Part shown: positions 1,789-62,699 of the stretch, one piece after another
How the letters are laid out: each line of letters opens with the position of its first letter
How positions within the stretch are numbered: the first letter of the stretch is position 1
Notes under the pieces: model-generated
Told to the model about the DNA's origin: nothing
What the model saw: only the letters and a program-made list of their open reading frames with translations
The model's database searches: none
Assembly (NCBI RefSeq): GCF_006345805.1
Contig: NC_043018.1
Span: forward strand, 11,904,001 to 11,968,000
Direction: 5' to 3'
DNA length: 64,000 nucleotides
Source of the DNA: Octopus sinensis
Lineage: Eukaryota
Position numbers and translations under genes: made by a program

Positions 1789-2040
1789 CTTTTGCTAGTG
1801 TGAAGGCGGTTTCACTTGCAGAGCTGGCAAAAGCCAACATTGTACGATCTACTGCAATGTTATTGGCGATGTAGACAGTTGGTCTAAGCTGTATTTGGTC
1901 ATCACAGACATCAGTGACATTGACAGTTATGGTGTGGGTGTTGTTGAGCTGTGGTTCACCCAAATCGCTGGCAAGGATTTCTATGGTGTACATTGTATTT
2001 GTTTCATAGTCAAGACTATGAATGGTGTATAAATCGCCAG
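1789..2040 (-). CDS. Cadherin exon 23 (252 nt, 1->1) [12 protein letters not shown]...ASDLGEPQL...TLAK
   Basis: Acceptor ccattacag, donor gttagt; LDYE and AxDxGxP motifs. Confidence 0.93.

Positions 2041-62699: not shown

What the first reader, a model, noticed from the sequence alone, without database searches (positions are those of the whole stretch)
1789..62699. Uninterrupted giant, divergent cadherin ectodomain spanning the whole window
Seen: 23 phase-compatible exons give 1,440 codons, all EC repeats (15 linker positions, 14 complete repeats), open at both ends with no TM segment. Known: clustered octopus protocadherins have only 6-7 ECs, mostly in one large exon, so this is not one. 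Very long cadherins include Fat, Dachsous, Cdh23-like proteins and the many-EC 'CDHX'-type cadherins described in octopus. Inference: the strong divergence and the shortened or loopless repeats fit a lineage-specific giant cadherin better than conserved Fat or Ds.
Basis: partly seen in the sequence, partly recalled or inferred. Interest (0 to 1): 0.72.

Follow-up and report, generated by a model that had tools for sequence, protein, structure and literature searches.

The report
Annotated octopus Cdh23-type long cadherin
The window is the middle part of one already-annotated Octopus sinensis gene for a fast-evolving 2,577-residue cadherin with about 21 repeats and a hearing-type (Cdh23/Pcdh15) membrane-adjacent domain; the exons were read correctly, but the protein is not open-ended or giant and is not a Fat or Dachsous gene.

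Summary
On the minus strand, 23 GT-AG exons (62699 down to 1789) give 4,322 nt and 1,440 codons without a stop, with 15 linker positions and 14 complete EC repeats. The model is 100% identical to residues 580-2019 of Octopus sinensis XP_029649531.1 ("protocadherin Fat 4-like isoform X3", 2,577 aa). It is 85% identical to an N-truncated O. bimaculoides model named "protocadherin-23". The gene is therefore already annotated and finite: signal peptide, Cys-rich N-terminal domain, 21 EC-like repeats, a membrane-adjacent domain (MAD), TM, and a ~150-aa tail ending -ESTDI. The window encodes EC5-EC18 plus two partial repeats. Both RefSeq names mislead. There are no EGF/LamG domains, and the MAD matches Cdh23 MAD28 by sequence (E 6e-9) and Cdh23/Pcdh15 EC-MAD units by fold (E 1e-19 to 1e-15). 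It is not the 77-EC CDHX. Outside Octopus nothing exceeds ~27% identity. The tail and N-terminal domain are Octopus-only. dN/dS is 0.54, only 3 of 15 linkers keep DXNDN, and N-glycan sequons are about twice as dense as in Cdh23. Best reading: a divergent, lineage-restricted member of the MAD-bearing Cdh23/Pcdh15-type cadherins, probably a flexible glycosylated surface link. Function and expression are untested.

The parts
62570..62699 (-). Exon 1 of the window (130 nt): end of EC4 (linker [10 protein letters not shown]) and start of EC5; model residues 1-43 = P0270 580-622
   Evidence: Acceptor CAACAG|, donor |GTAAGT; 100% match to P0270
58516..58598 (-). Exon 2 (83 nt): EC5, starts at ATDPDDD; model residues 44-70
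   Evidence: TTACAG| / |GTTAGT
54236..54326 (-). Exon 3 (91 nt): EC5; model residues 71-101
   Evidence: CTTAG| / |GTAAGT
51358..51486 (-). Exon 4 (129 nt): end of EC5, Ca-free linker PVNSYVPVF, start of EC6; model residues 102-144
   Evidence: CACAG| / |GTAAGT
50250..50299 (-). Exon 5 (50 nt): EC6, starts at ATDKDGD; model residues 145-160
   Evidence: TGTAG| / |GTAAGT
43895..44132 (-). Exon 6 (238 nt): rest of EC6, linker DSNNKKPKF, start of EC7; model residues 161-240
   Evidence: TTCAG| / |GTGCGT; PF00028
40965..41177 (-). Exon 7 (213 nt): EC7, starts at ATDDDIS; model residues 241-311
   Evidence: TTCAG| / |GTAAGA
38857..38945 (-). Exon 8 (89 nt): linker DINNHIPEF and start of EC8; model residues 312-340
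   Evidence: AATAG| / |GTATGG
35399..35573 (-). Exon 9 (175 nt): EC8; model residues 341-399
   Evidence: TGTAG| / |GTAAGT; PF00028
33189..33300 (-). Exon 10 (112 nt): end of EC8, linker DEDDIPLQF; model residues 400-436
   Evidence: TCAAG| / |GTGAGT
31622..31722 (-). Exon 11 (101 nt): start of EC9 (short, 91-aa repeat); model residues 437-470
   Evidence: TCCAG| / |GTAAAA
29776..29888 (-). Exon 12 (113 nt): EC9; model residues 471-507
   Evidence: TGCAG| / |GTAAAG
28540..28706 (-). Exon 13 (167 nt): end of EC9, linker NVNDAPTI, start of EC10; model residues 508-563
   Evidence: TACAG| / |GTAAGG
26968..27206 (-). Exon 14 (239 nt): rest of EC10, Ca-free linker NNGTEPFF, start of EC11; model residues 564-643
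   Evidence: TGCAG| / |GTAAAT
21592..21754 (-). Exon 15 (163 nt): EC11 (repeat 7 of the window, no PF00028 hit, hhalign 86%); model residues 644-697
   Evidence: CTCAG| / |GTAAGT
20117..20235 (-). Exon 16 (119 nt): end of EC11, Ca-free linker VIKPFEFV, start of EC12; model residues 698-737
   Evidence: TACAG| / |GTAAGA
17279..18529 (-). Exon 17 (1,251 nt, the one large exon): rest of EC12 (degenerate repeat 8), EC13, EC14, EC15 and first half of EC16; model residues 738-1154
   Evidence: CTCAG| / |GTGAGT; PF00028 E 8.6e-33
14644..14745 (-). Exon 18 (102 nt): EC16; model residues 1155-1188
   Evidence: ACCAG| / |GTAAGG
12171..12342 (-). Exon 19 (172 nt): canonical linker [10 protein letters not shown] and start of EC17; model residues 1189-1245
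   Evidence: TCCAG| / |GTAAGA
11924..12015 (-). Exon 20 (92 nt): EC17; model residues 1246-1276
   Evidence: GACAG| / |GTAAGT
4366..4506 (-). Exon 21 (141 nt): end of EC17, canonical linker [10 protein letters not shown], start of EC18; model residues 1277-1323
   Evidence: AAAAG| / |GTAAGT
3189..3288 (-). Exon 22 (100 nt): EC18 ([11 protein letters not shown]); model residues 1324-1356
   Evidence: CTCAG| / |GTAAGC
1789..2040 (-). Exon 23 (252 nt): rest of EC18 (best PF00028 repeat, 86.5 bits), variant linker [12 protein letters not shown], first 30 residues of EC19; model residues 1357-1440 = P0270 up to 2019
   Evidence: TACAG| / |GTTAGT, ends in phase 1

Best explanation
SHOWN. The window lies wholly inside one protein-coding gene on the minus strand. 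This is the Octopus sinensis gene that RefSeq calls 'protocadherin Fat 4-like' (isoforms X1-X6, 2,475-2,579 aa). Its 23 exons here encode residues 580-2019 of the 2,577-aa isoform X3. The full product is a type I membrane protein: signal peptide (~41-64), a ~100-aa Cys-rich N-terminal domain with no known family, 21 tandem EC-like repeats (169-2284), a ferredoxin-like membrane-adjacent domain (MAD, ~2281-2395), one TM (~2394-2426) and a ~150-aa acidic, Ser-rich tail ending -ESTDI. The EC+MAD+TM arrangement and the MAD sequence and fold place it with the MAD-bearing cadherin-related proteins typified by Cadherin-23 and Protocadherin-15. It does not belong with Fat, Dachsous, clustered protocadherins or the 77-EC CDHX. 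It is very divergent and, as far as these databases show, restricted to Octopus. INFERRED (mechanism). It likely works as a long, heavily N-glycosylated extracellular filament on an apical or sensory cell surface. A few stiff Ca2+-rigidified joints (3 canonical linkers in the window) alternate with many Ca2+-poor, flexible or bent joints. The MAD would sit against the membrane as in tip-link cadherins. The -S-T-D-I end fits a class I PDZ-binding motif that could tie it to a submembrane scaffold; alternative tails in X5/X6 would remove this. The fast-evolving N-terminal repeats would carry the binding interface.
For: Gene model and identity: (1440/1440 identical to P0270). Annotation in three species. 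Architecture: Pfam on P0270 finds only cadherin-type families plus PCDH15_12th at 2286-2371 (24.8 bits, E 2.3e-5). There are 21 EC-profile domains, with the signal peptide and TM shown by hydropathy. MAD: the pre-TM region alone matches Cdh23 EC25-MAD28 (8tri) at E 6.2e-9. Best MAD hits in fetched sets are Cdh23 of axolotl, Xenopus, Anolis, fish and a coral (E 1e-15 to 1e-12). The AlphaFold2 model of the last EC (EC21) plus MAD has pLDDT 81.6 with a b-a-b-b-a-b unit. The Foldseek top 9 are only Cdh23 EC25-MAD28 and Pcdh15 EC-MAD12 structures over ~215 columns (E 2e-19 to 9e-15, TM up to 0.78), with the next hit at E 1e-8. Divergence: next-best proteins are 22-27% identical. No longer protein contains exon 17. 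The tail and N-terminal domain match Octopus only. Constraint: intact ORF in O. sinensis, O. vulgaris and O. bimaculoides; dN/dS 0.54 overall and 0.19-0.26 in the repeats beside canonical linkers. Linker motifs. Sequon density is 28.5 per 1000 aa against ~12 in Cdh23. -ESTDI is conserved between O. sinensis and O. bimaculoides.
Against: No expression, localisation or binding data could be obtained. The skin-mucus 'protocadherin Fat 4' in the literature is a different gene. Function is inferred from architecture only. Repeat 8 of the window is not statistically an EC, and the single-sequence structure model of repeats 7-9 failed (pLDDT 34). The MAD model was predicted with an alignment that included Cdh23 sequences, though without templates. 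The Pfam PCDH15_12th hit is below the curated cut-off (24.8 vs 27 bits). Apparent restriction to Octopus depends on which cephalopod proteomes the databases hold and on word-based candidate selection. The PDZ-motif reading is a pattern match only.
Confidence: 0.8

Rival explanations
1. It is the true octopus orthologue of Cadherin-23 (the tip-link upper cadherin), shortened from 27 to about 21 ECs and evolving fast.
For: The MAD is closest by sequence to Cdh23 MAD28. The top Foldseek hit is Cdh23 EC25-MAD28 at 26% identity. Long alignments to Cdh23-like proteins of nemertean, amphioxus and fish are collinear from the N-terminal ECs. The C-terminus fits a class I PDZ motif, as in Cdh23.
Against: There are 21 rather than 27 ECs. 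EC identity to Cdh23 (24-27%) is no better than to Fat4 or Dachsous. In the tree of the last ECs plus MAD it sits on a 3.4-substitution stem outside the vertebrate-amphioxus-hemichordate Cdh23 clade. The tail has no similarity to any Cdh23. The N-terminus is a Cys-rich non-EC domain. Octopus has another gene named cadherin-23-like, LOC115232553, though that gene's own affinity was not examined.
Confidence: 0.2
2. It is a Fat4 or Dachsous-2 (protocadherin-23) family member, as the RefSeq names say.
For: These are the automatic names in O. sinensis, O. vulgaris and O. bimaculoides. Fat4 and PCDH16 proteins give the highest summed scores among non-octopus hits.
Against: Those scores reflect the number of ECs; identity is only 22-26%. 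No EGF or Laminin-G domains are present. A MAD sits where Fat has EGF/LamG. No protein named Dachsous/PCDH16 in the fetched set has a matching MAD or tail. There are 21 ECs against 34 in Fat or 27 in Dachsous.
Confidence: 0.03
3. It is part of the 77-EC octopus cadherin CDHX, or of another open-ended giant cadherin.
For: The window shows only EC repeats with no end in sight. The O. bimaculoides model is N-truncated, with further EC exons upstream.
Against: The O. sinensis protein has a signal peptide 579 residues before the window part and a TM 375 residues after it. The upstream O. bimaculoides exons correspond to P0270's N-terminal ECs. An exhaustive search of 1.84 billion representatives with exon 17 found no longer protein carrying it. 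CDHX has 77 ECs (PMC6339937 and PMC6062618, citing Wang & Ragsdale 2017).
Confidence: 0.02
4. It is a decaying or non-functional cadherin gene whose repeats are drifting.
For: Overall dN/dS is high at 0.54, with four repeats near or above 1. Most Ca2+-binding linkers are lost. One repeat is unrecognisable as an EC.
Against: There are 1,440 codons without a stop, with all 22 junctions canonical. The ORF and architecture are conserved across three species at dS 0.16. Several repeats have dN/dS of 0.19-0.26. The MAD, TM and C-terminal motif are conserved. Six RefSeq isoforms are annotated.
Confidence: 0.04

Closest known systems
Cadherin-23 (CDH23, upper tip-link cadherin)
   Same: A long chain of ECs followed by a ferredoxin-like membrane-adjacent domain, one TM and a tail ending in a class I PDZ-type motif. 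The MAD is the closest sequence match (E 6e-9 to 8tri; 1e-15 to 1e-12 to several Cdh23) and the top structural match. Some non-canonical linkers occur in both.
   Different: 21 ECs instead of 27. EC identity is only ~25%. It lies outside the canonical Cdh23 clade on a very long branch. The tail is unrelated, the N-terminus is a Cys-rich domain, far more linkers lack Ca2+ sites, and N-glycan sequons are about twice as dense.
Protocadherin-15 (PCDH15, lower tip-link cadherin; Drosophila Cad99C)
   Same: The EC-MAD-TM module. The predicted last-EC+MAD unit superposes on EC11-MAD12 structures with TM 0.74-0.78. There is a weak Pfam PCDH15_12th hit.
   Different: PCDH15 has 11 ECs. MAD sequence similarity is marginal (E 0.34) and identity is 16% in the structural alignment.
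Fat4 / Dachsous (the names RefSeq gives this gene)
   Same: A large non-classical cadherin with many ECs, some with Ca2+-free linkers. Generic EC similarity of 22-26%.
   Different: No EGF or LamG domains, a MAD instead, fewer ECs and no related cytoplasmic domain. The names are automatic best-hit labels.
CDHX, the 77-EC sucker-enriched octopus cadherin (Wang & Ragsdale 2017, as cited in PMC6339937 and PMC6110919)
   Same: A non-clustered, unusually long octopus cadherin.
   Different: 21 against 77 ECs. No giant protein contains this gene's exon 17. The CDHX sequence itself could not be obtained for a direct comparison.
Mollusc and arthropod ~1,900-aa 'cadherin-23-like' / Cad87A-like proteins
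   Same: MAD-bearing cadherin-related proteins of similar size, present in bivalves, an aphid and a lobster.
   Different: Their MADs match this one less well than Cdh23 MADs do (E 1e-8 to 1e-4). They form separate clades in the tree.

Membership tests
Cadherin superfamily | Tandem ~110-aa extracellular cadherin (EC) repeats (PF00028) | tested here: met
   PF00028 E 4e-133 with 12 stretches in P0270. 8 of the 14 window repeats pass the cut-off and 4 more reach >=95% by hhalign.
Cadherin superfamily | Canonical Ca2+-binding linker motif DXNDN between successive ECs | tested here: inconclusive
   Read by eye from the DXNDN column of the repeat alignment: 3 of 15 linkers are canonical, ~5 partial and 7 lack it. 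Ca2+-free linkers are known in other long cadherins, so this does not exclude membership.
Clustered protocadherins | 6-7 ECs encoded mostly by one large exon | tested here: not met
   21 ECs. The 14+ ECs in the window are spread over 23 exons.
Fat / Fat4 | 32-34 ECs followed by EGF and Laminin-G domains before the TM | tested here: not met
   Pfam finds no EGF or Laminin_G in P0270. There are 21 ECs, and a MAD precedes the TM.
Dachsous / PCDH16 / PCDH23 | 27 ECs directly followed by the TM, plus a conserved Dachsous cytoplasmic domain | tested here: not met
   21 ECs plus a MAD. The tail matches no fetched protein named Dachsous/PCDH16, and none of them has a matching MAD.
Cadherin-23 | Membrane-adjacent domain (MAD28-type) between the last EC and the TM | tested here: met
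   E 6.2e-9 to 8tri residues 355-446. Foldseek E 2.4e-19 to Cdh23 EC25-MAD28.
Cadherin-23 | 27 EC repeats | tested here: not met
   21 EC-profile domains, plus one non-EC N-terminal domain.
Cadherin-23 | Orthology: groups with Cdh23 of other phyla to the exclusion of other MAD cadherins | tested here: inconclusive
   The tree places Octopus outside the canonical Cdh23 clade, but on a 3.4-substitution branch whose position is unsure. Synteny could not be tested.
Cadherin-23 | C-terminal class I PDZ-binding motif that binds harmonin | not testable with these tools
   The C-terminus -E-S-T-D-I fits S/T-x-hydrophobic and is conserved in two species. Binding is untested.
Cadherin-23 | EC1 with the N-terminal features used for the handshake with Pcdh15 | tested here: not met
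   The N-terminal domain (65-168) is Cys-rich, with no Pfam hit and 0.7% hhalign probability to the EC profile.
Protocadherin-15 | 11 ECs plus MAD12 | tested here: not met
   The MAD fold is met (TM 0.74-0.78), but there are 21 ECs and MAD sequence similarity is only E 0.34.
CDHX (octopus 77-EC cadherin) | About 77 EC domains | tested here: not met
   21 ECs in a complete protein with signal peptide and TM. No longer protein contains exon 17.

The most novel reading that the evidence does not exclude
An Octopus- or octopod-specific tip-link-type cadherin. It would derive from the Cdh23/Pcdh15 group but be remodelled: 21 ECs, mostly Ca2+-free joints, a new Cys-rich tip domain and a new tail. 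Its N-terminal repeats would evolve under positive selection, and it would form extracellular links in a cephalopod-specific sensory or epithelial structure, such as the sucker chemotactile epithelium, epidermal lines or statocyst hair cells.
Probability: 0.15. Interest if true: 0.6.

Novelty: new member of a known kind. Interest (0 to 1): 0.3.

Why it matters
The gene itself is not a discovery, because it is already in RefSeq for three Octopus species. What is new is modest. Both automatic names (Fat4-like, protocadherin-23) are wrong at the family level. The protein belongs with the MAD-bearing Cdh23/Pcdh15-type cadherins. It is an unusually fast-evolving, Ca2+-site-poor, heavily glycosylated and apparently Octopus-restricted version of that design. 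It would matter if it turns out to be the link protein of a cephalopod mechanosensory or chemotactile surface, or the cephalopod replacement for Cdh23. Otherwise it is one more divergent long cadherin. For the scan, the useful lesson is that 'open at both ends' in a 64-kb window of a large-intron genome does not imply a giant protein.

Tried and rejected
An X-padded query was drafted but never submitted.
2. phmmer with the big exon against window ORF fragments found only itself, because the repeats are too divergent. A small EC HMM worked instead.
3. An ORF fragment at 60072-60134 that scored 5 bits as EC-like is not an exon. It is absent from both orthologues.
5. The first homology search missed the O. 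sinensis protein because 2,577 aa exceeded the length ceiling. It was found through the C-terminal region of P0001.
6. AlphaFold2 on repeats 7-9 without an alignment gave pLDDT 34 and is unusable, so the fold of repeat 8 is unresolved.
7. Wang & Ragsdale 2017 and the O. bimaculoides genome paper (looked up as PMC4795812 and doi 10.1038/nature14668) are not held. CDHX facts come from papers citing them.
8. The octopus skin-mucus proteome's 'protocadherin Fat 4' proved to be another gene, A0A7E6EMV1, with different signal and TM peptides.
9. Name look-ups of the >7,000-aa hits gave Nematostella, Monosiga and unnamed metagenome proteins, with no identifiable octopus CDHX.
10. An Rfam scan of the window found nothing.

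Full report
OBSERVATION

The window is AT-rich, repeat-laden eukaryotic DNA. A small EC-repeat HMM scanned against all six-frame ORF fragments put its top ~20 hits on the minus strand only, and plus-strand hits began at about 4 bits. Pfam finds the Cadherin domain in the large ORF 17216-18592 (E 8.6e-33) and in several smaller ones.

A draft concatenation retrieved one close relative, P0001 ('protocadherin-23 [Octopus bimaculoides]', 2,008 aa). Every other hit was only 23-31% identical. tblastn of P0001 on the window gave 23 collinear minus-strand blocks.

Refining each junction by splice consensus, phase and agreement with P0001 gave 23 exons. All are AG...GT and most have GTAAGT-type donors. 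The product has 15 linker positions and 14 complete repeats of 89-114 aa. It has no hydrophobic segment.

IDENTITY

A search with the C-terminal region of P0001 found P0270, XP_029649531.1, 'protocadherin Fat 4-like isoform X3 [Octopus sinensis]', 2,577 aa. My model is 1440/1440 identical to its residues 580-2019, and P0001 is 85% identical.

The 90% cluster holds six O. sinensis isoforms (2,475-2,579 aa) and two O. vulgaris models named 'protocadherin Fat 4'. The isoforms differ only at residues 1-68 and from 2456 onward, so all share these 23 exons. O. vulgaris differs at 9 residues in the window part, so the window is O. sinensis.

The neighbouring exons are not in the window ends. The O. 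bimaculoides RefSeq model is N-terminally truncated. EC-coding exons lie upstream of its start on the same strand (L001:6023-6265, 4298-4522 and 1328-1486), in a locus with many assembly gaps at the end of a chromosome scaffold.

ARCHITECTURE OF THE WHOLE PROTEIN

- Hydropathy shows a signal peptide near residue 41 and one TM at about 2394-2426.
- A profile built from the window's repeats finds 21 tandem EC-like domains from 169 to 2284. Seven of them lie outside the training set, at E 1e-5 to 1e-16.
- Residues 65-168 are Cys-rich, have no Pfam hit and do not resemble an EC.
- Pfam finds only cadherin-type families plus PCDH15_12th at 2286-2371 (24.8 bits, just below the cut-off). There is no EGF or Laminin-G domain.

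The window thus encodes the end of EC4, EC5-EC18 and the start of EC19, which is 56% of the protein. It is large, but it is not open-ended or 'giant'.

ARE ALL 14 REPEATS ECS?

- Eight repeats pass the PF00028 cut-off.
- Four are sub-threshold but align end-to-end (16-28 bits). They reach 95-97% probability against a profile of the strong repeats.
- Repeat 7 reaches 86%, against <=0.7% for shuffled controls.
- Repeat 8 (EC12) reaches only 4.5%, with a score of 18 against a shuffled maximum of 13.

A single-sequence AlphaFold2 model of repeats 7-9 was useless (pLDDT 34). Repeat 8 therefore remains EC-like only by position, length and pattern.

FAMILY

EC similarity does not discriminate. With the full protein as query, the score drops from 3,626 bits (O. 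bimaculoides) to 1,119 bits, and all further hits are 22-26% identical with mixed Fat4, Dachsous/PCDH16 and Cdh23 names. The discriminating part is the pre-TM domain.

- On its own, the pre-TM domain matches mouse Cdh23 EC25-MAD28 (8tri) at E 6.2e-9, and Pcdh15 only at E 0.34.
- Among fetched proteins its best partners are Cdh23 of axolotl, Xenopus, Anolis, fish and a soft coral (E 1e-15 to 1e-12). After these come Cdh23-like proteins of a nemertean, a hemichordate, a crinoid and amphioxus, then the ~1,900-aa bivalve 'cadherin-23-like' and Cad87A-like proteins. No protein named Dachsous/PCDH16 matches.
- An AlphaFold2 model of the last EC plus this domain, made with a 14-sequence alignment and no templates, is confident (pLDDT 81.6). 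It shows a b-a-b-b-a-b unit after the EC sandwich.
- The Foldseek top nine are exclusively Cdh23 EC25-MAD28 and Pcdh15 EC-MAD12 structures aligned over ~215 columns (E 2e-19 to 9e-15, TM up to 0.78). The next hit is at E 1e-8, and most later hits align only one EC.

The gene is therefore a MAD-bearing cadherin-related protein of the Cdh23/Pcdh15 type.

It is not demonstrably the Cdh23 orthologue. It has 21 ECs rather than 27. In a tree of the last three ECs plus MAD it sits on a 3.4-substitution stem outside the vertebrate-amphioxus-hemichordate Cdh23 clade. Its tail and N-terminal domain match nothing outside Octopus. Octopus also has another gene named cadherin-23-like, LOC115232553.

It is not CDHX, which has 77 ECs (PMC6339937, PMC6062618 and PMC6110919, citing Wang & Ragsdale 2017). 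An exhaustive search of 1.84 billion representatives with exon 17 found no longer protein containing it.

EVOLUTION AND LIKELY MECHANICS

Against O. bimaculoides, over 1,412 codons, dN is 0.086, dS is 0.159 and dN/dS is 0.54. Four repeats are near or above 1 (0.89, 1.25, 1.08 and 0.91). The repeats flanking canonical linkers are at 0.19-0.26. This indicates fast evolution under partial constraint, not decay.

Reading the DXNDN column of the repeat alignment by eye, 3 of the 15 linkers in the window are canonical, about 5 are partial and 7 lack the motif. By established knowledge of Ca2+-free linkers in Pcdh15, Fat, Dachsous and DN-cadherin, this predicts flexible or bent joints rather than a stiff rod.

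There are 41 N-glycosylation sequons in 1,440 aa (28.5 per 1,000, 3.4 SD above shuffles), against about 12 per 1,000 in fish and amphioxus Cdh23.

The C-terminus -ESTDI is conserved between the two species and fits a class I PDZ-binding pattern. Isoforms X5 and X6 replace it.

Inference: a flexible, glycosylated surface filament, held at the membrane by a MAD and possibly by a PDZ scaffold, with a rapidly changing distal binding end. Expression and function are untested.

VERDICT

The exon reading was right, and the rejection of Fat and Dachsous was right. 'Giant' and 'CDHX-type' are wrong. The gene is already annotated, under misleading names. Interest is modest.

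Noticed in passing
window 7606-10940: A 3.3-kb (AT)n microsatellite (about 1,690 copies, 79% matches) inside the 7.4-kb intron between exons 20 and 21. It drives GC down to 16% in that stretch.
   Followed up: partly
window 56077-56363 and 57270-57556: A perfect 287-nt inverted repeat (100% complementary, 906 nt apart) in the intron between exons 2 and 3. It flanks and overlaps a 231-aa minus-strand ORF (56713-57408) that has no Pfam hit. Read by eye, and not tested, the ORF has a GIY-YIG-like 'YVGET..R...R..EH' stretch. 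It could be a recent TIR-flanked or Penelope-like insertion, or an assembly artefact.
   Followed up: partly
window 37708-38361, 39501-40001, 45455-46231 (+ strand): Retrotransposon debris antisense to the gene: an RVT_1 fragment and two related zf-RVT ORFs from the same element family in two different introns.
   Followed up: partly
window 52248-52514 (- strand): A mariner-type transposase fragment (PF01359, E 2.4e-8) in the intron between exons 3 and 4.
   Followed up: partly
window 244-465 (+), 16444-16632 (-), about 35934-36263 (-); also 10485-11261, 23711-24068, 25037-25969 (-), 30821-31091 (+): Two families of short interspersed repeats show up as recurring pseudo-peptides in the ORF list ('...[28 protein letters not shown]' and '...[15 protein letters not shown]...'). 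They are scattered through the introns in both orientations.
   Followed up: no
window 17279-18529 versus the other exons: One 1,251-nt exon encodes about four ECs without introns, whereas the other repeats are cut into 50-250-nt exons. Three exons (2, 5 and 7) begin exactly at the ATDxD motif of their repeat in phase 0, a recurrent intron position.
   Followed up: no
L001:1328-1486, 4298-4522, 6023-6265: The O. bimaculoides RefSeq model 'protocadherin-23' (P0001) starts at an internal Met of the exon equivalent to window exon 1. Unannotated EC-coding exons lie upstream on the same strand. The locus sits at the end of scaffold CM046622.1 and contains 6.6 kb of N gaps.
   Followed up: partly
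literature, not the window: In the O. vulgaris skin-mucus proteome, a different 'protocadherin Fat 4' (A0A7E6EMV1, LOC115225134) and a 'cadherin-23-like' protein (A0A6P7UBR3, LOC115232553) are detected. Octopus therefore has at least one other Cdh23-named gene.
   Followed up: partly
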